From positions 58,032,001 to 58,096,000 of the forward strand of contig NC_086379.1 in assembly GCF_036588685.1 (NCBI RefSeq): a DNA stretch of 64,000 nt, written 5' to 3'. A program made the position numbers and the translations under genes. Shown here in pieces: positions 11,127-49,399 of this stretch. Numbering within the stretch: position 1 is the first letter of the stretch; each line of letters starts with the position of its first letter. The notes beneath the pieces were generated by a model. The model did not search any database. It saw only the letters and a list, made by a program, of their open reading frames with translations, and had not been told where the DNA came from. The DNA is from Mytilus trossulus. Taxonomy: Eukaryota.

Positions 11127-12626
11127 TCATTCTTTATAAAACTGATAAAACATTATAAAGCATTCAAAATGATAGAACATAACAAACGGAACCCAGAAAT
11201 GCTTAAATTTCAGCCAAGTATTACTGTTAAAAACTGGTTGAGTATTGTAAGCATGGTAAGGTACAGAAATAAATGTATACGAAAACCAAGTGTTGAAATT
11301 GACAAAACACATCACAAGAAAAATGTTTCTGATGGATAATACAGAATTAGAACTACTGAACTTCCGATATTGCTTCATCTGTAGGATAAAAGTGGTCTGT
11401 AAAATAGTGACAATAACTCTAACAACGGTATTCAGATGAATTCTGATGTCGTGAAACTGCGGCCGATTACGGCTGCTGAGACTTTCCAGAATGTAATAAC
11501 CACACGTAGCAAGAGATGTTGAAAGGATTATAAAATGTTGAATGTTGATTATTTTCCGTGGCCTTTCCTTTGGTTGTAGTTCTCCAGCTAATGCATGAAA
11601 ACACTTGATTGTTAGTGGTATCCGCAAAATGTTTCCGACAAGATAGTATGTATTCGGACCACCAGCTTGATTATACTGTGGAATGTACATTAAAACACAC
11701 TGAATTATGATGAAGGATAAACAAAACAATATACCAAGTCCGACTATGCACTTCGACTTCCTATTCATATGCCTGTTACGAACTGTTATATGTCCCGATA
11801 AAAGTTGGAAATGTTCTCCATTTTCCTGAGAAAATGAGGCAGAATCTAATAAATTAATTGTGTCAAGTGGCACTTTATGCTTTGGCCACATGTGAGAGAT
11901 GAATATCAAACTTAACAGACAATATTCTAGCAAAACTGGATCCAGGAATGGTTTAAGTATCTGTTCTGCTTTGTACAGAGTCGTTGCGTTGTTACATAGG
12001 TGTCCAGATTTATTTAGAATGTCATTTTTCTCCTCAAAGTACAAGTCTACATTTTTATGTGTCCACAAAGAGATATTTGCAACAAACAAAAACATCAGTA
12101 TATAATAGAAACATTTAATATTTGCAAATCGGAATCGTGAGAAATAAACAATGAATATGGTTTGTCCTAGATCGAAGAGCCAAGTTATTATATAGTAGAA
12201 TGCTTTCTGTGATAACGACTCACGTATATTACATTGAATATGAAGAGATAATTTCATTGCCTGTGATACGATATTTCCGAAACAAAAGAGCCACAGAAAC
12301 GCTAATTTCAGTTTGTGTGTAACTTGTCGTCTATGAAAAACCTTCCAATCGCTTTTTAAGTGAACTAGTAAGCTACAAGCGATCAAGAAACATATGGCAA
12401 GAGAGAGCACTCCAACAATTAACCATCTAGAATGTTTGGTTGGAAATATCAACATCACTTCAAGAACCGCTATAACTAGGGTCGTTAATAAGACAAGTCC
12501 GGATATACTTGCATCATGAACCGAGAATCCGCCATTTTCCCGCTTAGTCACTAGTCCTGCTGTAAAAGGCATTACCAATGCAGCATGTAAAATCCTTCGT
12601 AGCATATCTGGTGTCGTTTTATACAT
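11127..12626 (-). CDS. Otopetrin-like proton channel paralog 1 (499 aa, single coding exon)
   Basis: About 12 TM segments; motifs QTIFI, ANISLW, PFLDPVLLEYCL, QTTFILQ, VNFNTW, PFVMFYHFEC. Splice acceptor TTTTCTAG ends 4 nt before the ATG. Confidence 0.9.
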   Translation of the reverse strand: MYKTTPDMLRRILHAALVMPFTAGLVTKRENGGFSVHDASISGLVLLTTLVIAVLEVMLIFPTKHSRWLIVGVLSLAICFLIACSLLVHLKSDWKVFHRRQVTHKLKLAFLWLFCFGNIVSQAMKLSLHIQCNIRESLSQKAFYYIITWLFDLGQTIFIVYFSRFRFANIKCFYYILMFLFVANISLWTHKNVDLYFEEKNDILNKSGHLCNNATTLYKAEQILKPFLDPVLLEYCLLSLIFISHMWPKHKVPLDTINLLDSASFSQENGEHFQLLSGHITVRNRHMNRKSKCIVGLGILFCLSFIIIQCVLMYIPQYNQAGGPNTYYLVGNILRIPLTIKCFHALAGELQPKERPRKIINIQHFIILSTSLATCGYYILESLSSRNRPQFHDIRIHLNTVVRVIVTILQTTFILQMKQYRKFSSSNSVLSIRNIFLVMCFVNFNTWFSYTFISVPYHAYNTQPVFNSNTWLKFKHFWVPFVMFYHFECFIMFYQFYKE

Positions 12627-13585
12627 GTATCTAGAAAATCAATCATTCAATTCACTATAATTTGCTTCTCTAACTTCCGTAAACACATTTAATAAATTAT
12701 TTCGGTTTTTTTTCTTCAATTAAATTATTGTGAACTTTACATTGCATATTGTTGCACAGTAAATTAAACTTTCTCCCGCAGCATTTTTATTCTGATGCGA
12801 GTCTGTTAATCGAAACCGAGAATAACTATAGCCGCCAGAGAAAATTAGATGTGGATATGAAGAGGCATATAAGTACTTCCGTGGTTCGAATTATAGTATT
12901 TGAACAACAATTAAACCAATTATATTGAAAGAAGTTATTTATTTTCATTTCCTTATTTGAATGTTTCAAAAGCAAATTGTTTTATACTCACTTTCTGTAA
13001 AATGAAACTAGTTTTAATCTTGTATTTCGAATAAATCTCATAAACAACAAAGTTTAAAAGAATGGTTTCCTCGTCACGTTTTCATACAACCTACTTATAA
13101 TGCGAAGGGTATGAGTTCTCCGCTTATGTACAATATTCGAAAGTAATCTGCTATAGGATTTAAACTCACATGAGTCTTTACTAGATAATGTACAGCGAAA
13201 ACCAGCAATAACGTGAAGGATTAGCTTCAAAATGTATTCTTTAAATACCCTTTAAAACACGATTATTATCTGTTTTAAAAAAGATGCTTGATGAAAATTC
13301 ATTCAGGACTGATGGTCTTTTTAAATGTTTTTTTTTTTTTATAAGTAATGAAAATTCGTTATCTAAACTGATTTAGGAACGTATAGAAAATTTAGCGGAA
13401 AGTTCAAACTTAAAATATTTTAAAAACTTTACTATCATAATAGAAATAAGTAGCAGCACGCTAGCTTTTAAACGTGGTAGATAAGATAAAACACCTTCAA
13501 TATGTACACAACTCAATAACTTTGGAATTCTGATATTGTTCCTAGTTAATGACAAAATTGACTTTTATAGTGAAAGAGACAACAT

Positions 13586-14030
13586 TAACATGTATATGTA
13601 CCTGGCCACGTCCACTTGTATGTTTTGTCTATCTAGTGAGTTAAGCCTTTTTCAACTGATTTTTATAGTTCGTTCTTACGTTGTACCGTTATACCACTGT
13701 CCCAGGCTAGGGGTAGGGTTGGGATCCTGGTAACATGTTTAACCCCGCCACATTATTTATGTATGTGCCTGTCCCAAGTCAGGAGCCTGTAATTCAGTGG
13801 TTGTCGTTTGTTTATGTGTTACATATTTGTTTTTCGTTCATTTTTTTACATAAATAAGGCCGTCAGTTTTCTCGTTTGAATTGTTTTACATTGTCTTATC
13901 GGGGCCTTTTATAGCTGACTATGTTTTATGGGCTTTGCTCATTGTTGAAGGCCGTACGGTGACTATAGTTGTTTATGTTTGTGTCATTTTGGTCTTTTGT
14001 GGAATCATACCACATCTTCTTTTTTATATA
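13586..14030 (+). repeat. Longer copy of the abundant interspersed repeat
   Basis: 3' ~290 bp nearly identical to 4303-4612. Confidence 0.85.
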
Positions 14031-17000
14031 CTCATTAACTGTGTTTTTACATGTATGATTTTATATGGAAAACATTTTCCCTTTGAATAACAAACATATG
14101 AATGAACAAATCGTAGAGGTAAGCATTTACTCTATTTCTTCTGCTTTTTATTACTGGTCTTAATATAATAATCAAAACATTGTTTAAATAAAAATAAACG
14201 ATTTGAAATAAAAAGGAAAACAAGCATTCTGAGTGTATTGCATACATGCATTATAATGCCACTACCGGCTATAACGTTAATATTGAGTGCGTGTTTCCTG
14301 ATATTGAACAAGCAGTAAGTTTTCACCTGTAAGACAGGTGATTTTTATATTATAGCAAAGTTGACCTCAGATGAATTTGACGATTGTATGTTCATTTTGG
14401 TCATGTAGTTCGCAAGTGTTTAAGCTGTTATACGATGATGACTGATGTACCCGTATTTTGACCATTTTATTTATTGTGTCTATTTATTTAACGCATCAAT
14501 GTAAATATAACGGAATTTGATGAGACTGTCATTAAAGTGAGAGGGTTAGCGCTATAGAACCAGGTTTAATCCACCATTTTCTACATTTGAAAATGCCTGT
14601 TTCAAGTCAGGAAAATGACAGTTCTTGTCCATTCGTTTTTGATGCGTTTTGTTATTTGATTTTGCACTGTGATTATGGACTTTCCGAATTGATTTTCCTC
14701 TAAGTTCAGTATTTTTGTGAATTTACTTTATACATCACTGGCTTTCAATGTTTGGATTGAGCGTTCCTGATGAAGGATAATCCAGCAAAGCTCTTCGGAC
14801 TCATGAAAGTAATATTGTTGTTTTCATTTTTTTTAGATTGGGTCAGACAATTTATCAAAAGATGCGGATATTATTATAAATTTAAGGTTTTAAAGCGATT
14901 GTTTATTTTCAGTGACTAATATTCCTATAAAAATCGCTCAACAATACAAAACACACAATTAATCTGTATCTTATGATACTATACTAAAAAAACGTTAACC
15001 ATTGATTTAGGTAAAACAACAGAAAAGCGCAGAGAACTGCATTTCATCGAATTTTATATGTCAAGGTAGCGAACCTCTAGAAAATAATTACTCAAACGGC
15101 AATAATCACTCAAACAGGTCAAAACTCAAAGATGATCAGAAAATTCCAATAATAGGAATATGTTAGATCGTTTGATGAAAAAAAATGTGGGGAAAATTAT
15201 ATGTTTAAGCAATTGTCTATAGTTAAGAACCAAATCGTCCACAATTGTTTAAATTCTTTAACTTATTGACAATATTCATGAAAAGCAACATACAAATATT
15301 TGTAATATCGAGAGGATTTTTCTTCCGACGTTTGCATTTGCGCTAATATGCTCCTGGTGCTAGATTTTCTCGTTGCATTGAAGACCTATTGATGGCCTTT
15401 GTCTGCGGGTTGTTGTTTGTTTGACACATTCCCCATTTCATTCTCAATTTTAATTCACTTGCACCGATCTGCGTTTTTCTATCACATATATAATAATCAT
15501 CTTTTCGGCTAGCACATCTTAGGATAAGATTAGTTTGTGTCACAAGTTCAGTATTGATAGTTTTTTTCTTCATTTTTGCCAAATGGAATCTTTGACCAAC
15601 TATCTGAATCAGTATAATTGGGATCTAGACGAAAAATACAATCACTCTCTAAAGAAATCTGATATCTTTAAAAAAAAAAATGTTATCTTTGTTTGGCTTT
15701 ACTTCTTGTTCTTTTTGGGGTTTATTAGCTTTTAAACGTTGTTTGGATATTTAAAACGTTTGGTCTTGAGCAACACAAAAGAGAAACTAGTTGTCAAAAT
15801 GCTTATCTGGTGCAGTAACATTGGTACCGTAAATGTTATTGCAATCTTGAAAAATGTTTTTTTTCCTTTTTGTACAATGTATTCAGGTCTTACATTTCCA
15901 TAGGTATTGCGCTATATGCCTTCTGTTGATTACCTTCCCCTCCCGAAATATCCGATAACAAAACTTACCGATATTTCAGTATGCTCTTAAGGACCTAGCG
16001 CTTTTCTCTCTTTCCCTTGATTAAATAAATTTTAAAGTTGTTAACACAAAGCAATAAAACAATAAAATATTTCCCTATCTTTCAATGAGTTTTCTTCATT
16101 TTCACTTTAACAATACATATGTTTCCTCATTATAGCATTAGTTACTTTGTCATTATAATAAAACTGTGTACTTATTATTTTATTTCTAACACGAGGAAAT
16201 TCAGAAAGTATTATTTTTCTTAAATCTTTAATTGTCCTTACATAAATGATTTAACATTTTTAATTAAATTTATGCTGTTAGACAAGACGAAAGTCTCACC
16301 ATGTGTTACATAAAAATAGGAAGATGTGGTATGAGTGCCAATGAGACAACTCTCCATCCAAGTCACAGCTTATAAAAGTAAACCATTATAGGTCAAGATA
16401 CGGTCTTCAACACGGAGCCTAGACTCACACCGAACAGCAAGCAACAAAATGTCCCAAATCTTACTATTGGAAAACATTCAAACGGTAAAACCAACGTTCT
16501 AATCTATTTATAAAAAAAAGAGCCACTCTTTAAAGAGTTATGAGAGTAAACAATTTTGCTTAAATTATAATACAAATACAAGTCACGTTTAAAATACATT
16601 TTCGCTTTCTTAAAATGCACCAAAATTCTTTTTACTTGATACATAAAAAATATTTCGCGTCTGAAAAAAAAATAAAAAAAATATAATAAAAATAATATCA
16701 GGACAATTCGTTCCTTTTATTTCGCGCTAGAATACAAAAATGGAGATGTGATATAAATGCCAATGAGACAACTATTCACCATAGTTCAAATGAGGCTAAT
16801 GGAAGCAACTAAAGACACAATACGACCTTCAACTATGAGAAAAACCTATACCGTATACTCTGCTATAAAAGACCCCAACATGAATAAGATAAAACAATTC
16901 AATTGAGAAAAATATTAGCCTGAGAAATCAACATACGAAAAACAAATATTTAAGACGCGAACCAACGACAACAACTGAAATACAAGGATCCTGAGTTTCG

Positions 17001-20852: not shown

Positions 20853-22493
20853 ATGGATTTCTTTAAAGAAGTATTTCGAGCTGCATTTGTTTTACCGTTT
20901 TCGGCCGGTAATGTAGACGAGGAGAATGGTTCACATGACGGCAGCCTGGCAGGACTTTTACTGATGACTACTTCAATAGCTATCCTCTCTGAGATACTGA
21001 TGATTGGGTTTTCAACTAACGAGACTATTTCGTCTAAATTCAGCGTTGGACTAGCAGTCTTAACGTTTCTATCTGCTCTAGCAATTGTAATTTGCGTGTG
21101 TATCAGTTTATACGTGTCATCAAGAGGGAACCGTGTGTTTCGTATTTTACCATGGAATACATGTAATACAATAAGACTAAGGTTTTTGTGGATTTTTTGT
21201 TTCAGCTGTATTATTTCGAGAACATTGGACATGACCTTTTATATTGATTGTCTAACTAACTCATTGACATTGAAATTTACAGTAGACACTATAGTATATG
21301 CTCTGGTCTGTATAGTATTCTACGTTGTACAAACTGCATTTATAACATATTTTTCGCATTCTCGATTCACCAGCCACCTTGGTGTTTATTATGGATTACT
21401 TATTATATTCCTAACAAATATTTCAGTTATATGTCATGCCTTGGCTTTTACTTTTAAACCTAAGGAGATTGACATGGTTGACATTTTTAATTTGACGACA
21501 AATACCCAACATACTTCGAGTAATACATCTTGCTACAAGTCAAGTATGTACGCGGTATTGATGAAGATTGATCCTTTCTTGTTACCGGCATTTTGTGAAT
21601 ATTCGCTTGTTTCCATAACGTTTATTATGAATATGTGGCCAAAATTTGGATTAAAAAATGACGAATTTGTGCTTGATGATATTTCACTTGACGTAAACAG
21701 AGAAACGTCAGAGTCGACGAGCAATTTAAGAGGATCGATAAATGGTAGGTCAGATTCGACAAATAACAGGCGGAATAATGAAAACATTCCTTTATTAGAC
21801 AACCCTAAAAGCACAACAAACTACAGACAACACCGTATAAGAAGATTTATAAGCATATCTGTTCCTATTCTTCTTAATTTGCCATCAGTTATATTATACT
21901 GTTTACACATTTCAAAAGTTCCATCTGTACAATTAGGCTTAACAATATCAATTGCTGTAGGAGCTACTATTGAGCTGCTTTTGTACGTGAAATGCTTTTA
22001 CTCTCTTCAGACGCAATGTAAACCATTGAAACAAAAGGAATGTTCATCTCTTGATTCTGGTGATTACATTCTAATTGCAAGTGCGGTTGCAGCAATATCA
22101 TATTACACGGTAAAACTGATGTCAAATATTTACAATGTTAGCTCTGAAGCTACATATCCTATAGGTTTTTATAAACTTGTTATTGATATCATCGCAGCTT
22201 ATTTTCAAACGGTTTTCATTTTACAAATGAAAAAATATGCGAAGGCCTTTAATATTTCCTCATGGACGTCGGTTGAATATACATGTTTATTAATGTCTTT
22301 TATGAATTTATGTTCATGGGCGGCTGATACTCTAATAGTTTCACAATATGTTTACCAAAATGACGCACCATATCATTTCTTTGGGTCATCTGACTGGACA
22401 GAAATCTTTGGATTTTTATACCCATTTGTAATCTTTTACAGATTCAATGCTTTTGTTTCCTTTTATGGTTTGTATGATAGATTGAAACATTAA
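20853..22493 (+). CDS. Otopetrin-like proton channel paralog 2 (546 aa, single coding exon; most divergent and closest to canonical motifs)
   Basis: HDGSLAG, LRFLWIF, VQTAFI, TNIS, PFLLPAFCEYSL, FQTVFILQ, MNLCSW, FFGSSDW, YPFVIFYRFNA. Acceptor CATTAG ends at 20842. Confidence 0.92.
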   Translation: MDFFKEVFRAAFVLPFSAGNVDEENGSHDGSLAGLLLMTTSIAILSEILMIGFSTNETISSKFSVGLAVLTFLSALAIVICVCISLYVSSRGNRVFRILPWNTCNTIRLRFLWIFCFSCIISRTLDMTFYIDCLTNSLTLKFTVDTIVYALVCIVFYVVQTAFITYFSHSRFTSHLGVYYGLLIIFLTNISVICHALAFTFKPKEIDMVDIFNLTTNTQHTSSNTSCYKSSMYAVLMKIDPFLLPAFCEYSLVSITFIMNMWPKFGLKNDEFVLDDISLDVNRETSESTSNLRGSINGRSDSTNNRRNNENIPLLDNPKSTTNYRQHRIRRFISISVPILLNLPSVILYCLHISKVPSVQLGLTISIAVGATIELLLYVKCFYSLQTQCKPLKQKECSSLDSGDYILIASAVAAISYYTVKLMSNIYNVSSEATYPIGFYKLVIDIIAAYFQTVFILQMKKYAKAFNISSWTSVEYTCLLMSFMNLCSWAADTLIVSQYVYQNDAPYHFFGSSDWTEIFGFLYPFVIFYRFNAFVSFYGLYDRLKH

Positions 22494-24500: not shown

Positions 24501-27500
24501 TAGCCAAATATAATGTCTATTCTAATCAAATGCAGCAAGTTTGCTACGTTTAACTTTGAATTGTCATTAAAGTAATTAAGACGAACAATCATGATTAAAG
24601 AACCGTAGTGATCGTCTTTTATTGTATTATTGTATTTTGGTTCAAATTTTAGTTAGTGACAACTGCATATTAAGGTTTTGTTATGAAACAAAAACTTGTG
24701 TTAAATTGTTCAAAATGTATGAATTAGGCAACATATGTAAAAAGATTGATATATAGTCTTTGTATGAATAATTTGTGGGATAAACAGTGGTTGTTGAATG
24801 TAGACAGCTCTAGTTACCTTTGATAAGACAGTGTTTGTTTGATCAAGCTAACTAATATTTTTAGCTTCTTCAGCAAAGTGTAGATTATATAGGTATGCGG
24901 TAACAAATGTAGTTTTGCCATTTTATTTACAGAAATAAATTCCTGTACTTTTTCGTAAATGTATAACAATGATTCGTTTGTCTTCCCATAACATTTTTAT
25001 TGAAACTGGGCGTTATGTTGGTACTTATAGAAAGGTAAGAAAAAAATTGTGATTAAGGAGTAATAGAGGATGAATTTTATTTCATCCTACAATGTAGCAG
25101 ATATACTGATTTGCGAAAATAATATATAAAAAATATTACTGGTCTAGGCCATCAATTTTTAAGTTAATAGAATCATTATCTGATGAAAACACAAAACAGT
25201 TTTGTGACATAGGAATGTATATACATTTCTCTTCTAAATAAAAAAAAAACAGTTATAAAAGATATTGTGTATTGATGAAACTTCTGACGTCACTTATTGT
25301 TAATTATAGATCATTATACATATTGTTAACATTGTTTGTAATATGCCATATGTATACACTGTACAGGTACTCAATTACTGACGAGCCGTCAAGTTAACAA
25401 AGAATTTGAATTTATTGTAACTTTAAAAGAAGAATTTAAATTTTAGAAAATGTTCTTCAACTAATTAAGTATTTGATTTGGTCTGTTGATTATTTTGATT
25501 CGAACGCCGTTGGTGAGACGAAACGAGCGTCTGCAGTAGCACATAAGTAGCCCGGTATATTTTATATTAGAGTTTTTACACCCTTTTTGTTAAACTTTAA
25601 TACACGATTTTCAATAATATTATTTATATGTTAATGAAACGAAAAATCTTTTTGATGAAATATTTACAGAAATCATACCAATTTCACAGGTTAACCAAAA
25701 AGGTAATGTACTGTCGCCACAAACTTTTAAAAATAAAGTATCAAAACTATCAATATTTATCTTAAGAGTGTATCCAAAAAGGTAAATCATCAGTTTTACG
25801 AATGTGTCTGGTTGTTATCAATTTTTCAAAATAGTGTACAAAACCTAAAACGTAAGTAAATTAAGTAATTCAGTAAATAGTGAGTTAAAGCATAAAACTG
25901 TAAGCAAACGATCAGTGCAAAATATGCTGTAACGGAAACTATTTAAAGTACTTCATTTGTATTTAAACTCGTATTCAAAAGGTCATGGTAACACATTTAA
26001 TTCAATCGAATGAATTTCAATTACAAGGAAGTATTTCAAATAAACCCATAAATTTAACTCCAATATACGCAATAAGGTAAGAAAATTTAAGGCATAGATA
26101 TTAAAGTGCTTATTTTTCATATTATTCCAATTGTTTTATCATTATTATGAAACTGACTTTCAATTTGGCAATACTAATGCCGCCATATGAAAAGAGATTC
26201 AGATTCATTTAAAATTTCATAGTACATGACACCTTTTGAGAATGCATATAAATGATACCATAAGTATATCATGTATAAAATGCATAACATAAATAACATG
26301 ATTTTTTTTAGTGCGCACGGCATATTTGCTTTGGAAAAACTTTCATCTAGCACATATGATTGGATAACCAAAATATTATCATTTTAGGGCATTATAACCG
26401 AAAGGTCAACTTTAACAAGTAAACGTTTCGCTTCAGAGAGTTGTAACATAAGTTCCAACACAATTTGAAATAAAAGCCGATTATTTTTCTCTTTTGACAA
26501 AGTAATTACTTGGTCTATTATGTATTATTATAACGAAATACGAAACAAGAATATAGAGAATATAGGGGGAGCTTAGCTATGGCTCAACTTGTTCATTTTT
26601 ACATTCCATGGCTAAAGCTGTATCCCATTTTCTGAATACCTGTACCATGTCAGGAAAATAGAAGTTGTTTGTTATTGTTCCGTTAGTTGCTTCCTTTTTA
26701 ATTTACCTTCGAGTTCTGTATTGTTTGTTATATTTTTTTTTCTAAAAACCTATGCTCCTCTCAATTATTTAGGAACATGAACAAAGATTAGCTGAGAGAA
26801 AAATATCTTTGTTATATTTTTGTTGTCTTAGGTATTTGTTAATAACCCTTCACATTGTGTTTGTCGTCTCTTAAGAATTTATAAAAATTTGATTTCAAGT
26901 CAGAATCATTAATCAACATTACAATAAATAAGGAAACTCGTATAGTGTTTTTCACATGTTACATAAAAATGAAGTTAATATTCTTTAATCTATTTTATGC
27001 TCATTTTAAAGCATGGAGAGGTAAATTACTAAATCAAATGAAATAACGTAGTCGTTTGTACGAAAAGATAAAAGATAAATTCACACACATTTCAAATAAA
27101 AGGAAAGTGTCAAATAAAAATATTAAAATTCAGAATAAAAATGGAGAATGTGTCAAATAGACAACAAACCGACCAAATAGTAAACAGCAGCCGAAATCCT
27201 CAACACAGCGAGGAAATCCTGCACCCGAATAGGGGCTTCAGCTGACCCCTAAATAAAAGGTGATCTAGTTCAGTGAACATGGACGTCATAGTTGACTAAA
27301 AAAAACTATCTTGAAAAATTACTATAAAACCGAACTTATCATCATGAGGTTTATGTTACTATCTCTGTCGGAGACGGACCCAGGGAAACAGGTGACCTAG
27401 ACTACCTTTTACGAAACTGGACATAAGAATAATTCATTGAATTATACATGTTTCACTCCTTATCTTGTTTAGTATGCCTTCCCTCTTTTTCTAATTCTTG

Positions 27501-28714
27501 GATCTACATCTGACTGCTAAAATTTTGTTTTTGCCAGTTCACCGTGGTAAATCAAATATTGGACACAACATGACACTATTCCAAGAATAAACGAGCCACC
27601 ATACTATTTGATAAATCGGTATCGTGATCAATATCTTATATTAATTCAAACTGTCATTCCAATTTATTTATTCTATAAAAAAAATGGTATAAATAGTTCT
27701 TGGATATCCTTACTTTTAAATTTTTAATTAGAAATTTAGAAACAAAATTTACCGTTTAAGTCATATCAATACCGACGAATGAATGATTTGCGGAAGGTTA
27801 ACTTATCCAACATGCAGGTGTCTATCCAACATGCCAAGCTCCATGTCGTAGCGGGGCATTAACATTGGAAATTAATTCAACGTTCATTTCTCCAAATAAC
27901 AAAACGTATTTTAAAAGAAGAGCAAAATATACCAGGGAGACAGTCAAATCATAGATCGAAAATAAACTTACATAGCAATAGCTGAAAAAGAAAACGACAA
28001 ACAGACACATTATAGTACACAATACAAAACATAGAAAACTAAAGACTAAGCAATACGAACCCCACCAAAACTTGAGGCGATACAAGATATGACGTATACA
28101 ACTGCTTAGAACACGCATATACAAATTTATATGTTAAATTTGTCGTATTCAGATGATGAAAAAAGTTATACTTTATTATTACTAATGGTTAAAACGAACC
28201 GAGAAAAAAATGATAGAAACTTTACAAAGGTAACAGTAGTATTACGCTGTTCAAAGTCAGAAATCAATTGAGAGAAAAAAAATTCGGGTTACAAACTATA
28301 AAATCGAGGGAAACATTACAACTGTGAGGAAAAAACAACGAAACAACAGAACACTGAATGCAAAAAAAAACAAAACAACAACCGACAAAACATTAATTGT
28401 TATACTGTATTTAATTGAAGTAGTTGTTGCATGTCATATTCTAATTCTTTTCGTTATGTTGAGAATTTGATGTCATGCATATTCAAGGAGAAAAACAAGT
28501 AATAAGAAATTTAAAACATGAGTCACTCTACTATAGTTCTCGGCTTACCTGTTTTCTCATTGTTTAGGCGGAATGTATATTTAAAAATTGTGAGCTTGAT
28601 GTTTGCTGACTTGTAATTGTAAAAACATAATACATATGTGGGAAGATTATTCAATTAATAAAAATTCAGGGGTAGCTTTACTTCAAGTCATTTTATTTTA
28701 TTTGCAGCTAAATA

Positions 28715-30214
28715 ATGACGAATCTACTGTGTAATATATTGCGTGCTACTTTTATTGTTCCTTTTTCTGCTGGTCTTATTAAGGAGCGAAGAAATGGAGG
28801 TTTTTCAGTACATGATGGCAGTATTGCAGGCGTAGTTCTTTTGACCACAGCCATGATTATTATCTTTGAAATTATAGTTGTACTACCAGTGAAACAGTCT
28901 CGATTGCTGATGGTAGGGCTTGCAGGTCTGGCGTTAATCTGTCTGGCATTGTGTAGTATTGTCGCTCGATGCCGTTCTAACTGGCTGGAAGTAAAGACTG
29001 TGAAACCGAGCGATCAATTGAAACTAAAATTTCTATGGCTATTTTGTATCGGAAATATAACGTACCAAGCATTACAACTAGCAATGCATCTCGTTTGTAA
29101 GATCTACAACCTTCAAGTCACATTGTTTTGGACATTTACCTGGACATTTCAGATATGTCAAACTGCGTTCATTCACTATTTTTCTAGATTTAGATTTGCA
29201 AATGCTCTGTGTTTGTATTACGGGTTGTTGGTTCTCTGTGTGACAAATATTTCAATGTGGACACAGCAAACGTTCTATACGAACAGAATTAGACACGAGA
29301 TAAATATTAGCAACATTATTAATAATACAACCTCGAACTGTTTTTATGCTGATGGACTTGCAACAGCAATTGCATACTTGAATCCATACCTACAACCTGT
29401 ACTTCTAGAATATTCTCTTTTAAGTCTGATATTTCTTTCTGAAATGTGGCCAAAAAAGAAGGTCGAATTTGAGACATCCAACAATTTTCTTTCAAGAGAC
29501 ATAGACGATGAAAACCAGACATTACTAGTACAAAATGATGATCTAGATAGTGAACAACATCCACTTCTGCCGCGCAGTAATGTCTGGAATAAAAATTCAG
29601 TATGCGTCCTGGTGATAGGATTTCTTTATAACTTCTTATTTATGATCATTCAATGTATATACATATATAGACCTAGGGAAACAATGACAGATTACAGGAC
29701 GGTTTCCTATATTATCTTCTTTTGTGCTAATTTAGTACGAACGCCGCTTATAATCAAGTGCTTCTATGCATTAAACGGACAATTAAGACCAAAACAGGAA
29801 AGTAATAGTGGGATGAGTTTAGATCAGTTTGTTATAATAACAAGTTCGTTTGCGACTTGTGGATACTATATTTCAGATTGGTTCAGTGAGTCACCATCAA
29901 ATACAGATTCAGGAGACATTCTGTTTAAAGTTAATGCCTTCTTTCGTATTATTGCTACGCTTTTTCAAACATTATTCATTTTGCAAATGAAACATTACAA
30001 AAAGATAGGAGACCAAAAGCCTTTTTGTTCTATACAAAATACTTTTTTGTTTGTATCATTGGTTAATCTTGGAATATGGATGTCATACACTTTTGTAAAT
30101 CCCAGATATCGTCTGACACCATCTAGTTTTTTACTAGAAAGTTTTTGGTTTCCATTTGTTTTATTCTATCACTTCGAATGTTTTGTCGCATTTTACAAAT
30201 TTTTTCGAGCATGA
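28715..30214 (+). CDS. Otopetrin-like proton channel paralog 3 (499 aa, single coding exon)
   Basis: HDGSIAG, CQTAFI, TNISMW, PYLQPVLLEYSL, FQTLFILQ, VNLGIW, PFVLFYHFEC. Acceptor TTTGCAG ends at 28707. Confidence 0.92.
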   Translation: MTNLLCNILRATFIVPFSAGLIKERRNGGFSVHDGSIAGVVLLTTAMIIIFEIIVVLPVKQSRLLMVGLAGLALICLALCSIVARCRSNWLEVKTVKPSDQLKLKFLWLFCIGNITYQALQLAMHLVCKIYNLQVTLFWTFTWTFQICQTAFIHYFSRFRFANALCLYYGLLVLCVTNISMWTQQTFYTNRIRHEINISNIINNTTSNCFYADGLATAIAYLNPYLQPVLLEYSLLSLIFLSEMWPKKKVEFETSNNFLSRDIDDENQTLLVQNDDLDSEQHPLLPRSNVWNKNSVCVLVIGFLYNFLFMIIQCIYIYRPRETMTDYRTVSYIIFFCANLVRTPLIIKCFYALNGQLRPKQESNSGMSLDQFVIITSSFATCGYYISDWFSESPSNTDSGDILFKVNAFFRIIATLFQTLFILQMKHYKKIGDQKPFCSIQNTFLFVSLVNLGIWMSYTFVNPRYRLTPSSFLLESFWFPFVLFYHFECFVAFYKFFRA

Positions 30215-32026
30215 TTTTATTATGTATTCGACATAGGACAAAACCAAATATCTGCAAGTGACTGTATATCCTCCTTTGGTTCTAATCGAATGTAATAACC
30301 CTAAGTATTATTTTTTCATCATTTTTTCTACACTAAATTATTTTAATTTATTTTTTAATTTATTTTTATAAAAACATTTATAACTTTTCCCTTGGTTAAG
30401 TCCAGTAAGATTGCCATTTGACCCAGGACAAATTGCAACAGAAAAAACAAATTTTCACCTTCCATCACAGTACAAAGAAATTCTGCTTTTCATTATATAT
30501 TTTTTTACGAAAGTTTACTATCAATATATTTTAAACAGAAAACTCATTTGTTTTGATGAGAAAGGAATAGTCAGTATACAAATTTCAACTTGTGTCAATG
30601 GATTGTTTTGTCAATGAAAATATGGATTGTTTCATGTTTCGATAATTCTGAATAGGACAAGTATTAGCTTTCAAAAATGTTTGTCTGATTTGAGTATCTA
30701 TTAGATGTGAACAGAAGTATATTCTGAGATACGAGACAAGTATTTGTATAGATTTAGGACTTCATTTAATGCAGATTAATAAAGTGTAGGAAAATTATAA
30801 ATACGATGTTTTATCATTGGTAATATACTGTTTCAACAGATGCATGTGAATGTATTTGATTTTCTGGGATTTAAGCTTATTATTTATTATTCTTATACAG
30901 TGGGAAATGTAGTGAATAAACGGAATAACGTTCAAATAAAAAGTTAAACTTGAAATAATTTAAAATAAAAATAAAACTTCAACTCAATTTTATTATTTTC
31001 CTTCTGATGTAATAATTAAACGACGAGTACATCAATCTTTAGAGTGGAGTAAACATATTTCTATGAGAATAAATTCCTAGAGTACCAACTTCAATTTTAT
31101 TTTCACTATCTGTATACCTTTCTGGAGCAGGCTTAATTTTCGTATATATATATACAGATGGATCAGAAAAAATCATGTTATGCAGCAAAAATTGTCACTT
31201 TTGAAATGTACAATTATTATTTAAAAATAACTTTTGACCTATATCGTCACCGGTCTTGTTTTTGTTGTTGACTTTTTCGGCTCTATCATAAGAAAAGTGA
31301 ATTTGCTTTTGTTTTTGTTTACTGGATATCCCACTGTATAGATGACTTTTTCTAATCTATTAGACTTTGTCAGAGTAACTTTAATTTTAAAAGTTAACAA
31401 CATTTACCTCTATGCACAATTAGTTTGATAAGATTGATGAAAACAATTAGCCATCTTGTATTATTTCTATTTTGTATTTAATAAAATCAAGTAAATACAT
31501 AACTATTGCACGTGTTTGATTTGAGTTTTGTTTTAATCGGTTAATGGTATCTTTACCTAACTCTCCTTTCAAATAATTGTCCTCAAAATCAAAACATAAA
31601 AACAAACAAAACAAAACAAATATCACTAAAAACCTTTTAAATTGTAAGGATACATGTGTTATAATGTACAAAGGTGTAACGTTTTTTTATAGTTTAGTTA
31701 ATCAATATCCCAATACCCTATGCTGTAAATATATAAAACTGGTCGTCTTTATTTTAGATTGTTTACTATAACCGAATGTTTTCACATGACAAGGGATACA
31801 AACATAGCAAGATAAGCTTAAGCTGTCGACTCAACCTGTTTCGCTACTTTAAGGAATTATGCGATTCCCACAATTTTGGTCTGTACTTTTATCCAGTTTA
31901 TCAAATTAAGACATCGGATTTACTACTTTTGCCTATATTTAAGAATTGTTACCCTTGTTTATAGCAATAAACAGATTCAAAGATATAGCATGTCCTTTAT
32001 AGCTTGTTGTTCGGTGTAAGCCAGGG

Positions 32027-40380: not shown

Positions 40381-41877
40381 ATGAATCAGCTATGCAATAT
40401 TTTGCGTGCTACAATCATCGTTCCGTTTTCTGCTGGTTTGATAAAGGAACGACGGAATGGAGGATTTTCGATACATGACGGCAGTATTGCAGGGATAGTT
40501 TTACTGACCACAGCTATGATCATCATATTTGAAACAATAGTTGTACTACCAGTGCATCAGTCTAGATTGTTGATGATAGGACTTGCAGGTCTGGCGTTGA
40601 TCTGTCTAGTGATGTGCAGTGTTGCAGCTCGGTGCCGTTCTAATTGGGTCGAAATAAAAACTGTAAAACCTAGCGATCAAATGAAACTGAAGTTTCTGTG
40701 GTTGTTTTGTATCGGGAATATTATATATCAAGCAATGCAACTAGCTATGCATCTCGTTTGCAAGATATACGACTTCCAAGTCACACTATTTTGGGCGTTC
40801 ACCTGGGCATTTCAGTTATTCCAAACCGTTTTCATTCACTATTTTTCTAGATATGAATTTGCCAATGTTTTGTGTTTGTATTACGGTTTATTGGTGTTAT
40901 TTGTGACAAATATTTCAATGTGGTCACAACAAACTTTCTATACATACAGAATTAGTCATGATATAAATATTAGCTATCTCATCAATAGCACGGTCTCAAA
41001 CTGTTTATACGATGATGGACTTTCTGAGGCAGTAGTATATTTGACTCCGTATCTGCAACCAGTATTACTAGAATACTCTCTTCTAAGTTTGATATTTCTT
41101 TCCGAAATGTGGCCAAAAAAGAAGGTTGAACTTGAAAAACTCAACATTTATCTTGCAAGAGATGCAGATGATGAAAATCACACATTATTGGTACAAAATG
41201 AAGACCTTGACAGTGAACAACATCCACTTCTGCCGCGCTGTAGTGTCTGGCATAAAAATTCAGTACGTGTCCTGGTAATAGGTTTATTGCATAACTTTTC
41301 ATTTCTGCTATTACAATGTATTTACATTTATGGACCGCGGGAAAAAATGACAGATTACAGGACATATTCTAACATTCTCTTCTTTTGTGCTAACTTTGTT
41401 CGAACGCCACTTATAATCAAGTGTTTCTATGCATTGAACGGACAAATATGGCCAAAACAGGAAACTAATAGTGGGATGAGCCTAGATCAGTTTGTTATAA
41501 TAACAAGTTCTTTTGCAACTTGTGGATATTATATTTCAGATTGTTACAGTGTTGTATATCCAAATTCAAAACCATTAGAAGTCCTGTTTCGAATCAATGC
41601 TGTCCTCCGTATTTTTGCAACACTATTTCAAACTTTATTCATTTTGCAAATGAAACACTACAAAAAGATAGGAAACCAAAAGCCTTTTTGTTCAGTTCAA
41701 AATACTTTTTTGTTTGTGTCCTTGGTAAATCTTGGAATATGGATGTCCTACACGTTTGTTAATCCCAGATACCGTTTGATACAATCTAGTTTTGTATTGG
41801 AAAGTTTTTGGTTTCCATTTGTAATTTTCTATCATTTTGAATGTTTCGTCGCATTTTACAAGTTTTTTCGAGCGTAA
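40381..41877 (+). CDS. Otopetrin-like proton channel paralog 4 (498 aa), recent duplicate of paralog 3
   Basis: Colinear with 28715-30214, roughly four of five residues identical by eye. Acceptor TTTTACAG ends at 40372. Confidence 0.92.
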   Translation: MNQLCNILRATIIVPFSAGLIKERRNGGFSIHDGSIAGIVLLTTAMIIIFETIVVLPVHQSRLLMIGLAGLALICLVMCSVAARCRSNWVEIKTVKPSDQMKLKFLWLFCIGNIIYQAMQLAMHLVCKIYDFQVTLFWAFTWAFQLFQTVFIHYFSRYEFANVLCLYYGLLVLFVTNISMWSQQTFYTYRISHDINISYLINSTVSNCLYDDGLSEAVVYLTPYLQPVLLEYSLLSLIFLSEMWPKKKVELEKLNIYLARDADDENHTLLVQNEDLDSEQHPLLPRCSVWHKNSVRVLVIGLLHNFSFLLLQCIYIYGPREKMTDYRTYSNILFFCANFVRTPLIIKCFYALNGQIWPKQETNSGMSLDQFVIITSSFATCGYYISDCYSVVYPNSKPLEVLFRINAVLRIFATLFQTLFILQMKHYKKIGNQKPFCSVQNTFLFVSLVNLGIWMSYTFVNPRYRLIQSSFVLESFWFPFVIFYHFECFVAFYKFFRA

Positions 41878-45560: not shown

Positions 45561-47050
45561 TTTAAACATATTTTATTGTCCAAAAACATTGACAATAGGA
45601 TTAGACACAAGTTTTGCAACTCAGAACGTCTTCTCCATTACATACAAATAATAAATAACCGAACAAAAATGAAATACATAATAATAACATCTTAAACAAT
45701 ATTAATATGAAGACATGAAACTAACGAGAATTTAAACGACATGACTCATCTATTTCTAAAAGTCGAGTTGACCGTAAATTTGTATGATAGACCTACCTGG
45801 TAGGTTGTATTAATCTTGGAATAAATATTCCCTCAAAAGGTAAGTGTTTACTGTATTTTAAACAAATAAGTTAAATTGTTGTTGTCAACTGATGAATTAT
45901 ATACTAAAATCAAATTGATGATCCATGTCTTAGGAAAAAATGAACAATTTCATTCGAAGTCAACAAAAAGTAATAACATTGTTATTGGTATATATTTAAC
46001 CATAATGTCTATAAACTATGAAAAGCTATTGGTCTCTTTAATATAATTCTGCACTTTTATAAAAATTAGCCTGTTTATGTTAAAAGTAAACAAAGCATTG
46101 CCGTACATTAAATTTTCAAAGTCGATAGGTATATTTTCTTTTCTAAGTTCAAAAAATAAGGTATTCCTTTGCACTGTATAATTTTTACACGAGAGGAAAT
46201 AATGTTGGGCATTTTCGTATAAATAACCACATTGACACATTGCGTTAGTTTTAATATTAGCGTGATACAGATCCATGTTCAGGGCACTGCATTTGTTCCT
46301 TAATCTTGCGTGTAAAACATTTAAATATCTATCGCCAATATTGAAATATGTAGGGGGTGATTTGTTTTTATAATATTTCTGTTTAATTTTCAATTTAAAC
46401 ATATTTAAAGAAAGTTCATTTCTAACACTTAAATCAAGCGAATTCCACAGTTTGATACTAGATGGAATAAATGATTCCTGATAAAGAGACAGTCTGCTAG
46501 AGGTTTGGTATATATTTTGACTGCTTCGTAGATTGTAATTGTTTGTTTCTGCAACTGTAGGGGGTATTAAATCTAATAAATATTCTGGGGCATCCTCTTT
46601 CATAATTTTGTAAAATAAAGTTAATTTCTTAACTTCCCGTCTAATCCTTAATGTTTCCCATCCCGTCTCTAAATAAAGTGATTGAGTGCTAGCATAGCCT
46701 GTTAGACCAGTGACAATACGTGCTGCTTCCAGTTGTAATTTTTCTAATCTTTCAGAATTCAACTGTCCGCAATTATCCCAAACTTCAGAAGAATATTCTA
46801 GAACAGGCCTTATAAAAGTTAAATATATTTTTTCTAAATATTCCCTTTTTAGTCGGAATTTCAAACGTCGAAGAACATTTAATTGTTTTGATACCTTTTC
46901 TATTAAAGAATCGACATGCTTGGCCCACTTACAATCACTGCTAAAAAATATGCCTAAATGTTTATGACTAGTAACTGTATCTACCTGAACTCCGCCAAAA
47001 TTAAAAATCAAGTTATTTTTTAGGAATGTTGATATGGAAAGTAACATTTA
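45561..47050 (-). mobile_element. 5'-truncated CR1/L2-group LINE (RT C-terminus plus 3' UTR)
   Basis: ORF 46016-47047: HKHLGIFFSSDCKWAKHV, YLTFIRPVLEYSSEVWDNC, LEKLQLEAARIVTG, C-terminal CQCG...HYFLSC. 3' end AATAAAATATGTTTAAAC at ~45561-45578. Confidence 0.88.
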
Positions 47051-47931
47051 TTCTCAATATTCAATATTCACCATTTCAGAAACTTAAACCTTCCGGATAT
47101 AAAAGCATACACCAAAAGAATCCGATTGGTGAGCAAAAAAAGATATAAAAAAATAAAATAACAAAAATACAAAACTCCGAGGAAAATTCAAAAACGGAGA
47201 GTTCATAATCAAATGGCAAAATCAAAAGCTTAAACACAGCAAACGAATGGATATCAACTGTCATATTCCTGGATTGATACAGGCTGTTTGTATATAGAAA
47301 ATAGGGGATTAAACCCGGTTTTATAGCTAGCTAAATCTCTGACTTGTATAGCAGTCACATAACGTTCCTTTATATTGACAACGATGTGTGAACAAAACAA
47401 ACACGGGACATAATTCCAATCACGTCACGTTCCTCATTTTGGTTTATAAAACAATACATGTTAAAACTATTAAAATTCATTTTGTATCTAAATCAGTTAA
47501 TTTTAACTATACGTTGTCTAACACATTAGTTTAATTTGAAATTATTTCGAATTATTTCACAACCTGTCAATGCCATGGCCATAATAAGATAATAGATACA
47601 TTGATGTTGTGAAACGCATATTTTGATTATTTTACTCAAAACGATGCATATATGTTAATGAAAGAAAAGAGCAGGAAGTTTTTCTTGTAAGAATATTGCA
47701 TTTTGATTAGTGTTATCAGGTAAGAATGGTTGGTATTCTTGATAAATACCAAATGACTGATATCCGCTCATTTGAACATATCTGATTACTGTCCTATAAT
47801 TTTTTTAAACTACTGTGACTATCTATTTCAGGGGGAAATGATTTGAAATATTGACACCGTTCAATGGTCATCTCGAAACTAAATAATCGTTTAATAAGAT
47901 AAACTTCCATATTACGACGACAGCATCAAAC

Positions 47932-49399
47932 ATGAGACAAAAATTGAAGAAAATCCTGCATGCTGCATTTATAATGCCATGGACAACTGGTTTAATTAAA
48001 GAATATCGTAACGGTGGTTTTTCAAAACATGACGGCAGCATTGCTGGAGTAGTTATTTTGACAACAATAATCATCATGATATTCGAACTTATGGTTTTCT
48101 TCCCTAAAACGACTTCTCGAATAGTCATGACTGTTTTGTTGATCATCGCAATATTCACATTGATATCCATGAGCCTTTCAGCTTGTAAGAATACACACTG
48201 GACAGTACCAAGAATGTCAAAAGGCAGTCACAGTTTGAAATTGAAATTCCTTTGGCTATTTTGTGTAGCCAATATTACCTTTGAAGTAGTGAAATTTGCA
48301 ATTTATAGCAAATGTGACCAACTTCCAGATGTTCTACTGTTTTATATTTCAACTTGGATATTTCAAATTTTGCAAACATTCTTCCTTCATTACTTTTCCA
48401 AATTCACATTCAATAATATACTGTGCCTCTATTATGGATTTCTTGTTCTGGTTGTTACAAATTTTTCACTGTGGACACATCGAACTATGTTTACATATTA
48501 TGAAGCCAAATCATTTTTAAACATCAGTGACATCAGTGGAAATGTATGTAATGATACAAAATCTTTTGTTCCGATGGAGAAGTTTAAACCATTTTTAGAT
48601 CCAGTGTCTTTAGAGTATTGTCTTTTGTGTGTAATACTTCTATCTGAGATGTGGCCGAGAGCAAAGTATCCCGAACATCAAAGTCGACAACTACAAGAGT
48701 CCTCTTCAAAGGAAGAAACAGAAGAACATCAGTGGTTATTGCGTTGCAATAGCAATGTTCCGACTAGAACAGTTTGGAATAGAAAATCAATTATAGTTTT
48801 GTTTATTGGTGTCTTGTATATGATTGTATTTCTTGTTATACAGACATTATTTCTTAACATTGATCAACTGAGAAAAAATTACTTGCACGTAGCGTTCGTA
48901 TTTTATGTTTGTGGAAATTTCATTCGGATACCGCTTACCATAAAGTGTTTTTACGCATTTTCTGCACAACTCCGTCCTAAATCAAATGTTCAAACGGTCA
49001 CGGATATGAAACATGTAATTATCGTAGTTAGTTCAATGGCTACATGTGGATATATTATAGCAGAATGTGTAGAGAATCTACGCCACGGTGAAGTGAAAAT
49101 CATACTTAATGCCATTTTCCGTTATGCAAACGTCCTTTATTTTGCAAATGAAACAGTACAAACGAGTAGACAGAACAAACACTATAACGTCTATACAAAA
49201 TACATTTTTATTCATGTGCTGCATAAACTTCAGTTTTTGGTTTTCATACACCTTTATATCACCGCAGTATACTGTCAGATTGCATAGACACTTCTTTGGA
49301 ATTACCAGCTGGCTAAAAATTAAACATTTCTGGTTCCCTTTTATTATATTTTACCACTTCGAGTGTTTTATCTCATTTTATGACTTCTTTAGGACATGA
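47932..49399 (+). pseudogene. Otopetrin-like paralog 5, frameshifted (about 14-nt deletion near 49123-49126)
   Basis: Frame 1 matches paralogs up to NAIFR; a second frame continues QTSFILQMKQY...PFIIFYHFEC to TGA at 49399. Paralogs have 6 codons between R and QT; this copy has only TATG. Putative 5'UTR intron 47720-47831. Confidence 0.85.

What the first reader, a model, noticed from the sequence alone, without database searches (positions are those of the whole stretch)
11799..48741. All five paralogs keep an acidic dileucine sorting signal (ExxxLL) in the hypervariable cytosolic linker
Seen: EHFQLL (11799-11816, minus), ENIPLL (21780-21797), ENQTLL and EQHPLL (29510-29527, 29552-29569), ENHTLL and EQHPLL (41173-41190, 41215-41232), EHQWLL (48724-48741). 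The surrounding TM6-TM7 linker differs strongly in length and sequence. Known: [DE]xxxL[LI] binds AP-1/2/3 adaptors and directs endocytosis or lysosomal targeting. Inference: these channels may work on endolysosomes, phagosomes or mineralising vesicles rather than at the plasma membrane, a role I do not recall being described for otopetrins.
Basis: partly seen in the sequence, partly recalled or inferred. Interest (0 to 1): 0.8.

Follow-up and report, generated by a model that had tools for sequence, protein, structure and literature searches.

The report
Conserved dileucine motif in mussel otopetrins
Five mussel genes for otopetrin-like channels all carry a short E-x-x-x-L-L sequence in a floppy loop facing the cell interior; the sequence is kept across mussels, oysters, scallops and ark clams, looks like the tag that sends membrane proteins into endosomes and lysosomes, and has not been tested.

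Summary
All seven stated ExxxLL sites are at the stated coordinates, and E, L and L are invariant columns in the five-paralog alignment.

The motif is far more than chance:
- Of 171 family members with a definable TM6-TM7 linker, 104 carry [DE]xxxL[LI], against 10.3 expected from shuffles.
- In a non-redundant set it is 65 of 127, against 14 for the reversed pattern.
- Positions not used to find it are also constrained. Position -4 is 94% Glu, -2 is 56% Thr/Ser and -1 is 49% Pro (5% background). The real motif is E-x-[TS]-P-L-[LI].
- It occurs in Mytilus, Ostrea, Crassostrea, Argopecten and Tegillarca. It is absent from OtopLc-type otopetrins.

The linker is cytosolic, by homology to TM6 of solved structures, the positive-inside rule and glycosylation sequons. 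AlphaFold2 predicts it disordered.

My best reading, at 0.6, is a clathrin-adaptor (AP) sorting signal. Whether the channels reside on endolysosomes or mineralising vesicles, or only cycle from the surface, is not shown.

A vesicular otopetrin is already published: sea-urchin Otop2l in 2026, with no signal named. One paralog is frameshifted in this assembly. Paralog 3 is transcribed and spliced.

The scan had noted this gene cluster before, on this same stretch only and not on other DNA.

The parts
11127..12626 (-). Paralog 1, otopetrin-like CDS of 499 aa in a single coding exon
   Evidence: ORF list and translation. 31-44% identical to the other four paralogs. It scores 3.4e-226 against the profile built from the five window paralogs themselves, so that score only confirms mutual homology.
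11799..11816 (-). EHFQLL, the family-homologous dileucine motif of paralog 1
   Evidence: Translation. It falls in the invariant E/L/L columns.
11847..11864 (-).
   Evidence: It is kept as DTMNLL in P0016 (named M. edulis) and DTMGLL in P0019 (named M. californianus), as seen.
20853..22493 (+). Paralog 2, otopetrin-like CDS of 546 aa
   Evidence: Pfam PF03189 at 9.9e-23. AlphaFold2 gives 12 helices and pTM 0.71. All 12 Foldseek hits with E<=0.001 are otopetrin structures.
21780..21797 (+). ENIPLL, residues 310-315 of paralog 2
   Evidence: It lies inside the pLDDT<50 coil 267-320, just before helix 7, which starts at residue 321.
26045..26076 (+). 3' end of a non-coding 5' exon of paralog 3, followed by the splice donor GTAAGA
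   Evidence: The upstream loose end of a run X3 contig matches 26045-26074 exactly. The donor is read directly.
26077..28707 (+). 5'-UTR intron of paralog 3 (GT...AG) with a polypyrimidine tract before the acceptor at 28706-28707
   Evidence: Contigs of runs X3 and X4 begin to fit at 28706 and carry unlike sequence before that point. The acceptor is read.
28715..30214 (+). Paralog 3, otopetrin-like CDS of 499 aa, transcribed
   Evidence: A 1540-base contig of run X1 lies on 28763-30302, and no contigs lie on the flanks apart from a repeat.
29510..29527 (+). ENQTLL, an extra lineage-specific motif copy in paralog 3
   Evidence: Also present in P0002, P0003 and P0004, which names as M. californianus (P0002, P0003) and M. 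edulis (P0004).
29552..29569 (+). EQHPLL, the family-homologous motif of paralog 3
   Evidence: It falls in the invariant columns.
40381..41877 (+). Paralog 4, otopetrin-like CDS of 498 aa
41173..41190 (+). ENHTLL, the extra motif copy in paralog 4
41215..41232 (+). EQHPLL, the family-homologous motif of paralog 4
47932..49287 (+). Paralog 5, reading frame lost near 49122. The ORF is 451 aa with an out-of-frame tail.
   Evidence: An intact 493-aa near-identical homolog, P0014, exists elsewhere.
48724..48741 (+). EHQWLL, the motif of paralog 5
   Evidence: It is identical in the intact homolog P0014.
49109..49399 (+). Displaced reading frame that holds the TM10-TM12 part of paralog 5
   Evidence: ORF list, translation, and a profile match to positions 418-501 at window 49118-49393.

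Best explanation
The window holds a tandem cluster of five otopetrin-fold membrane proteins. They belong to a large subfamily that is expanded in bivalves and has its whole coding sequence in one exon.

The only long flexible cytosolic segment of these proteins is the linker between the two six-helix barrels. It carries a conserved short linear motif, E-x-[TS]-P-L-[LI], preceded by acidic residues and lying about 5-20 residues before TM7.

I read this as a canonical acidic-dileucine sorting signal. It would be bound by the small/large-subunit hemicomplexes of clathrin adaptors (AP-2 alpha-sigma2, AP-1 gamma-sigma1, AP-3 delta-sigma3). Binding would pull the channel into clathrin-coated carriers, so that a substantial share of it is internalised from the surface and/or delivered from the TGN and endosomes to late endosomes, lysosomes or lysosome-related and mineral-handling vesicles.

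What is shown: the motif, its position, its conservation, its cytosolic and disordered setting, the presence of AP sigma genes in the genome, and transcription of paralog 3.

What is inferred: AP binding, the destination compartment, and that the proteins conduct protons.
For: - The motif is at all stated sites, and E, L and L are invariant in the five paralogs.
- In this genome, 22 of 27 full-length paralogs carry the strict motif. A further 3 have V or M in the last position: EYEPLV, ESSQLV and an off-register DIELLM.
- Family-wide, 104 of 171 linkers carry it against 10.3 expected. Controls with reversed order, wrong spacing or a basic residue at -4 are low.
- Positions not used for matching are non-random. 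At -4 Glu is 94% and Asp 6%. At -2 Thr/Ser is 56% against 21% background. At -1 Pro is 49% against 5% background.
- Named species with the motif are Mytilus spp., Ostrea edulis (ERAPLL), Crassostrea virginica, Argopecten irradians and Tegillarca granosa.
- In a tree built with the linker removed, the motif occurs in all three major subclades of a 100-row clade. This fits an ancestral motif with repeated loss.
- Motifs have been duplicated independently in paralogs 3 and 4 and in scallop P0072, which has EWTPLL twice.
- Cytosolic side. The TM6 Pro-x-x-x-Glu aligns with mOTOP2 P246/E250, whose N-terminal half of TM6 faces outside (PMC11343839). 'In' loops carry 16.0 K/R per protein against 4.2 in 'out' loops, and N-x-S/T sequons concentrate in the TM5-6 loop.
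- Accessibility. The linker 267-320 has pLDDT below 50 and no secondary structure.
- Precedent. [DE]XXXL[LI] signals, such as LIMP-II ERAPLI, bind AP-1 gamma-sigma1 and AP-3 delta-sigma3 and need exactly the E, L and I/L (PMC2173715). Dileucine motifs target TPC2, TRPML1, CLN7 and lysosomal BK (PMC11381013).
- AP sigma exons are present in the genome.
- Sea-urchin Otop2l sits on endocytic calcifying vesicles as well as on the plasma membrane (PMC13000164).
Against: - No binding, mutagenesis or localisation data exist for any of these proteins.
- The motif is in an internal loop, whereas most characterised signals are in N- or C-terminal tails.
- About half of the non-redundant family (62 of 127) lacks the strict motif, including whole subclades.
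- According to the cited work, AP binding needs only E, L and L/I. The additional conservation of [TS]-P may therefore point to another or an additional reader, for example a proline-directed kinase.
- The sequences are related, so the counts are not independent events. The tree is a FastTree and most rows have no taxon name.
- The otopetrin with shown vesicular localisation (sea-urchin Otop2l) could not be fetched, so I do not know whether it has the motif.
Confidence: 0.6

Rival explanations
1. The motif does bind AP complexes, but the channels work at the plasma membrane. The signal would only set surface density (AP-2 endocytosis and recycling) or polarised delivery in epithelia such as the mantle (AP-1). 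Organelles would not be the place of action.

This shares the mechanism of the best explanation and differs only in the destination. Its 0.3 is therefore a share of the 0.6 given to the AP-signal reading, not an addition to it.
For: The same consensus serves endocytosis as well as lysosomal targeting (PMC2173715). Sea-urchin Otop2l is on the plasma membrane too, and its authors propose passive uptake with endocytosed seawater. A review classes OTOP as plasmalemmal. The motif sits a median of 20 aligned residues before TM7, not tightly apposed to the membrane.
Against: The acidic stretch with Pro at -1 resembles lysosomal and lysosome-related-organelle signals such as LIMP-II ERAPLI. Oyster P0081 has ERAPLL. 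Independent motif duplications suggest selection for strong sorting.
Confidence: 0.3
2. E-x-[TS]-P-L-L is a conserved linear motif with a reader other than AP complexes. Candidates are a proline-directed phosphorylation or docking site, a partner-protein site, or a segment that docks back on the channel's cytosolic face and regulates gating between the two barrels.
For: [TS]-P at -2/-1 is conserved beyond what AP binding needs (compared with the residue requirements). Ser is enriched after the motif. The linker joins the N- and C-barrels, whose relative movement matters for conduction (PMC11343839).
Against: The three best-conserved positions (E at -4, L at 0, L/I at +1) are exactly the AP-critical ones. 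Glu is preferred to Asp 94:6, and L/I at +1 with occasional V, M, Y or F fits the hydrophobic sigma pocket. AlphaFold2 gives no docked or helical structure for the segment.
Confidence: 0.17
3. The matches are chance or simple inheritance among young paralogs, with no function.
For: [DE]xxxL[LI] is short. Shuffled linkers match in about 7% of cases. The five window genes are paralogs, and pair 3/4 is young at 82% identity.
Against: 104 observed against 10.3 expected. The motif is retained between proteins 25-30% identical, and across mussels, oysters, scallops and ark clams, while the surrounding linker is unalignable. Unmatched positions are non-random and the pattern controls are low.
Confidence: 0.03

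Closest known systems
[DE]XXXL[LI] acidic-dileucine sorting signals (LIMP-II/SCARB2 ERAPLI, HIV-1 Nef ENTSLL)
   Same: Same consensus, with the same critical positions E(-4), L(0) and L/I(+1). Pro is often at -1 and acidic residues lie upstream. The setting is cytosolic and unstructured. Oyster P0081 has ERAPLL, one residue away from LIMP-II's ERAPLI.
   Different: Here the motif is in an internal inter-domain loop of a 12-TM protein, not in a terminal tail. [TS] at -2 is also conserved. No AP binding has been shown.
Endolysosomal channels and transporters targeted by dileucine motifs (TPC2, TRPML1, CLN7/MFSD8, lysosomal BK)
   Same: These are multi-pass channel or transporter proteins whose organellar residence depends on cytosolic dileucine motifs (PMC11381013).
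   Different: They have unrelated folds, and their motifs sit in the N- or C-termini. Their localisation and the effect of motif mutants are experimentally shown, which is not so here.
Sea-urchin Otop2l (Strongylocentrotus purpuratus)
   Same: It is an otopetrin-family proton channel of a marine calcifier. It is found on the plasma membrane and on endocytic Ca-rich calcifying vesicles and vacuoles (PMC13000164).
   Different: It is a deuterostome protein. No sorting signal is described, and its authors propose incorporation by bulk seawater endocytosis. I could not fetch its sequence to scan its linker.
Structurally solved otopetrins (zebrafish OTOP1, chicken and Xenopus OTOP3, mouse OTOP2, C. 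elegans OTOP8) and invertebrate OtopLc
   Same: Same 12-helix double-barrel fold: all 12 Foldseek hits with E<=0.001 are otopetrins, probability 1.0, TM-score on target 0.59-0.76. The TM6 Pro-x-x-x-Glu is conserved.
   Different: Only 11-15% identical to these. The TM12 histidine (mOTOP2 H551) aligns with Glu, Asn or Lys here. The coding sequence is in one exon. OtopLc-type linkers (Aplysia, insects, Hyalella) have no dileucine motif and end in a conserved HHFSVDC-like stretch instead.

Membership tests
Otopetrin (Pfam PF03189) | Sequence match to the family model above its curated threshold | tested here: met
   Paralog 2 scores 81.2 bits (cut-off 27.8) and paralog 5 scores 32.7 bits. Paralogs 1, 3 and 4 give no hit on their own but are clear homologs of paralog 2. 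The profile of the subfamily hits OTOP2, OTOP3 and OTOP1 chains at 3e-16 to 6e-8.
Otopetrin (Pfam PF03189) | Twelve TM helices forming two homologous six-helix barrels | tested here: met
   The AlphaFold2 model of paralog 2 has 12 long helices and pTM 0.71. All 12 Foldseek PDB hits with E<=0.001 are otopetrins, and the next hits fall to E>0.02. Only paralog 2 was modelled.
Otopetrin (Pfam PF03189) | Conserved TM6 proline and proton-carrying glutamate (mOTOP2 P246/E250) | tested here: met
   P and E are invariant in alignments A1 and A2 and align to OTOP2 residues 246/250 (role from PMC11343839). A few family members elsewhere have A or Q at the Glu position.
Otopetrin (Pfam PF03189) | TM12 proton-accepting histidine (mOTOP2 H551) | tested here: not met
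   In the profile alignment H551 pairs with Glu in paralogs 1, 3, 4 and 5 (FYHFEC) and with Asn in paralog 2 (FYRFNA). This bears on proton conduction, not on fold membership.
Otopetrin (Pfam PF03189) | Proton-selective conductance | not testable with these tools
   This needs electrophysiology.
[DE]XXXL[LI] AP-binding sorting signal | Sequence consensus with acidic -4, Leu 0 and Leu/Ile +1 | tested here: met
[DE]XXXL[LI] AP-binding sorting signal | Located on the cytosolic side of the membrane | tested here: met
   This is an inference from three lines: homology to the TM6 orientation in solved structures, the positive-inside rule at 16.0 against 4.2 K/R, and sequons in the TM5-6 loop. There is no direct experiment.
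[DE]XXXL[LI] AP-binding sorting signal | In an accessible, unstructured segment | tested here: met
   Residues 267-320 of paralog 2 have pLDDT below 50 and are coil. The motif is at 310-315.
[DE]XXXL[LI] AP-binding sorting signal | Evolutionary conservation against a diverging background | tested here: met
.
[DE]XXXL[LI] AP-binding sorting signal | The reading machinery (AP sigma subunits) is present in the organism | tested here: met
   PF01217 exons lie above the cut-off at three or more loci of G000.
[DE]XXXL[LI] AP-binding sorting signal | Direct binding to AP hemicomplexes, and loss of sorting on LL>AA | not testable with these tools
   This needs yeast three-hybrid or pull-down assays and cell imaging.

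The most novel reading that the evidence does not exclude
The bivalve-expanded, single-coding-exon otopetrin-like clade would be a family of organellar ion channels, for protons or perhaps another ion given the changed TM12 residue. The channels would be sorted by the linker E-x-[TS]-P-L-L signal, through AP-3 or AP-1, to lysosomes, lysosome-related granules or calcifying vesicles.

The paralogs that lost the motif would be the surface forms. This would give otopetrins a defined organellar branch, and a molecular route by which calcifiers put proton channels on mineral-forming vesicles.
Probability: 0.3. Interest if true: 0.75.

Novelty: new variant of a known kind. Interest (0 to 1): 0.55.

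Why it matters
Otopetrins are treated as plasma-membrane proton channels. The one report of a vesicular otopetrin, in sea urchin in 2026, names no targeting mechanism.

A conserved AP-type signal in a large molluscan otopetrin subfamily gives a concrete test by point mutation of how, and whether, such channels reach endolysosomal or mineral-forming vesicles. That bears on intracellular calcification, on pH control in bivalve shell formation under ocean acidification, and on lysosomal physiology in animals with intracellular digestion.

LL>AA mutants would also be a practical way to trap these uncharacterised channels at the surface for electrophysiology.

Tried and rejected
I had hoped to reach echinoderm Otop2l and vertebrate OTOPs to scan their linkers, and did not.
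Most motif-bearing representatives from ENA, Logan and JGI therefore stay without an organism name, and I cannot say whether the motif clade is strictly bivalve.
- A first regex for TM6 missed many proteins. I replaced it with profile-anchored linker extraction.
- A broad literature query with min_terms 2 returned no otopetrin papers. The targeted queries found no paper on an otopetrin dileucine signal or on molluscan otopetrin localisation.
- The 5' loose end of the X4 contig has no match in the window. Only the X3 loose end could be placed.
- Rejected readings: chance; an extracellular linker; 'intronless gene', because the coding sequence is one exon but paralog 3 has a 5'-UTR intron.
- I built and searched no joined 5'UTR-plus-CDS transcript.

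Full report
WHAT IS THERE. The window maps to G000:C7:58032001-58096000, a 1.3-Gb Mytilus-type genome. The closest named proteins are from M. californianus, M. edulis, M. coruscus and M. galloprovincialis. The window holds five uninterrupted ORFs of 451-546 aa. Paralog 2 matches Pfam Otopetrin at 9.9e-23 and paralog 5 at 4.9e-8. Paralogs 1, 3 and 4 give no Pfam hit alone, but they are 28-44% identical to the others. A profile of the subfamily hits mouse OTOP2, chicken OTOP3 and zebrafish OTOP1 chains. An AlphaFold2 model of paralog 2 has mean pLDDT 70, pTM 0.71 and 12 long helices. All 12 of its Foldseek PDB hits with E<=0.001 are otopetrins, and the next hits drop to E>0.02. The ESM Atlas look-alikes are otopetrin clusters, the nearest one molluscan.

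THE OBSERVATION. In the five-way alignment, E, L and L are invariant columns inside a linker of 44-65 aa. Outside those three residues the linker is 13-31% identical, against 25-44% for the rest of the protein. Paralog 1 has a second match, DTINLL, at 11847-11864(-). Paralogs 3 and 4 each have two, and EQHPLL is the copy in the family-homologous position.

IS IT MORE THAN CHANCE? This genome has at least 55 matches to the subfamily profile. These include about 28 full-length copies with an uninterrupted coding sequence, in clusters on five contigs. Of 27 full-length ones, 22 carry strict [DE]xxxL[LI] in the linker. Three more end in V or M: EYEPLV, ESSQLV and an off-register DIELLM. An exhaustive profile search found 1121 relatives at E<=1e-3.

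After profile-anchored extraction of the linker, 104 of 171 proteins carry the strict motif, against 10.3 expected from shuffling each linker. At under 60% identity it is 65 of 127. For comparison, the reversed pattern occurs in 14, wrong spacings in 17 and 29, and a basic -4 residue in 3.

Positions that played no part in the match are also strongly non-random. Glu is preferred to Asp 94:6 at -4. Thr/Ser is 56% at -2 against 21% background. Pro is 49% at -1 against 5% background. Acidic residues are enriched at -5 to -8. The conserved unit is therefore E-x-[TS]-P-L-[LI].

Named carriers include Ostrea edulis (ERAPLL), Crassostrea virginica (ENTPLL), Argopecten irradians (ENTPLL, and EWTPLL twice in a tandem duplication) and Tegillarca granosa (ELSPLL). 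OtopLc-type proteins from Aplysia, insects and Hyalella lack it, as do the Lingula, Branchiostoma and Saccoglossus proteins.

I built a FastTree with the linker removed. The OtopLc types are basal, and a 100-row clade (support 99) carries the motif in all three of its major subclades. This fits an old motif with repeated losses, at least 27 state changes. Three caveats apply: the rows are related, most have no taxon name, and the tree is a quick one.

WHICH SIDE OF THE MEMBRANE? The conserved P-x-x-x-E-Y before the linker aligns with mOTOP2 P246/E250 in TM6. In the solved structures the N-terminal half of TM6 faces the outside (PMC11343839), so the chain leaves TM6 into the cytosol. Two independent counts agree. 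Loops predicted 'in' carry 16.0 Lys+Arg per protein against 4.2 in loops predicted 'out'. N-x-S/T sequons pile up in the TM5-6 loop, at 1.66 per protein. In the model, residues 267-320 are coil with pLDDT below 50. The motif (310-315) lies just before the cytosolic start of helix 7. The proteins have essentially no C-terminal tail, so this linker is their one long flexible cytosolic segment.

EXPRESSION. Contigs of four small public runs lie only on 28706-31330 of the laid stretch 27200-31700, apart from one repeat. Contigs of runs X3 and X4 stop fitting at 28706, directly after a ttttatttgcAG acceptor. The upstream part of the X3 contig matches window 26045-26074 exactly and is followed by AG|GTAAGA. 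Paralog 3 is therefore made as a spliced mRNA with a 5'-UTR intron at 26077-28707 and its whole coding sequence in the last exon. The tissue is not known. I built and searched no joined transcript.

MECHANISM. [DE]XXXL[LI] signals bind AP-1 gamma-sigma1 and AP-3 delta-sigma3 hemicomplexes. For LIMP-II's ERAPLI, only E, L and I are strictly required (PMC2173715). Dileucine motifs target TPC2, TRPML1, CLN7 and lysosomal BK to late endosomes and lysosomes (PMC11381013). AP sigma exons are present in this genome.

The three most conserved positions here are exactly the AP-critical ones, in a cytosolic disordered segment. I therefore put 0.6 on a functional AP sorting signal. Of that 0.6, I give about 0.3 to organellar residence and 0.3 to surface-centred function. 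The extra [TS]-P conservation leaves room for a different or additional reader, such as a phospho-regulated or docking motif (0.17). Chance is about 0.03.

COMPARISON WITH WHAT IS KNOWN. In the held library, the only paper containing both 'otopetrin' and 'dileucine' is a review that calls OTOP plasmalemmal. No paper on molluscan otopetrin expansion or localisation turned up. A vesicular otopetrin is, however, already published. Sea-urchin Otop2l is on the plasma membrane and on endocytic, Ca-rich calcifying vesicles and vacuoles. Its knock-down lowers vesicular proton permeability, and its authors propose uptake with endocytosed seawater and name no signal (PMC13000164).

The new elements are therefore the signal itself, its position in the inter-barrel linker, and the large bivalve subfamily that carries it. 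A non-surface otopetrin as such is not new.

Whether these proteins conduct protons is also inferred. The TM6 Glu is kept, but the TM12 His of mOTOP2 aligns with Glu, Asn or Lys.

Two word-index searches were unproductive. The sequences of sea-urchin Otop2l and vertebrate OTOPs could not be brought in for a linker scan. Only paralog 2 was modelled. The earlier scan note s1-820735 describes the same five-gene cluster on this same stretch, and I found no note of it on other DNA.

Noticed in passing
window 49109-49399 and about 49122: Paralog 5 loses its reading frame right after '...NAIFR'. Compared with the intact 493-aa near-identical protein P0014, the residues VIGT(V) are missing, which corresponds to a 14-base gap. 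TM10-TM12 continue in another frame (ORF 49109-49399). This is either a pseudogene allele or an assembly error.
   Followed up: partly
window, C-terminal helices of all five ORFs (e.g. 30170-30214): The TM12 proton-accepting histidine of mOTOP2 (H551, FYRMH) aligns with Glu (FYHFEC) in paralogs 1, 3, 4 and 5 and with Asn (FYRFNA) in paralog 2. Other family members have Lys. The TM6 Glu is kept here but is Ala or Gln in some relatives (L030, P0040, P0136, P0150). Ion selectivity or mechanism may differ from that of characterised otopetrins.
   Followed up: partly
G000 contigs C1, C2, C5, C7, C14 (loci L006-L030): The subfamily is greatly expanded. There are at least 55 profile matches and about 28 full-length copies with an uninterrupted coding sequence, mostly in tandem clusters, plus several broken copies with internal stops.
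   Followed up: partly
window 26045-26076 and 26077-28707: Paralog 3 has a non-coding 5' exon and a 2.6-kb 5'-UTR intron, so the genes are single-coding-exon and not intronless. A contig of run X4 carries a different upstream sequence that has no match in the window. That could be an alternative 5' exon or an allele.
   Followed up: partly
window about 28024-28072: A short element about 0.65 kb upstream of paralog 3 has very high contig depth in all four runs (44-178, against 3-13 on the gene), with many different flanks on both sides. This looks like an abundant dispersed repeat.
   Followed up: no
window, N-terminal 40 codons of each ORF (e.g. 28715-28835): The short cytosolic N-terminus is unusually conserved. 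The pattern is L-P-F-[ST]-A-G ... H-D-G-S-[IV]-[SA]-G, with P, G, H, D and S invariant across 18 diverse members. It may be a second functional element of unknown role. In CeOTOP8 the pre-TM1 loop takes part in dimer contacts (PMC11343839).
   Followed up: no
window 46016-47047 (-): A 343-aa ORF between paralogs 4 and 5 has no Pfam hit at E<=0.01. From memory its sequence resembles the C-terminal part of a non-LTR retrotransposon ORF2. I did not check this.
   Followed up: no
P0072 (Argopecten irradians), linker: A tandem duplication of about 19 residues carries the motif (…HDTEWTPLLNSINGLEQ twice). Together with the second motifs in window paralogs 1, 3 and 4, this shows independent gains of extra copies.
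   Followed up: partly
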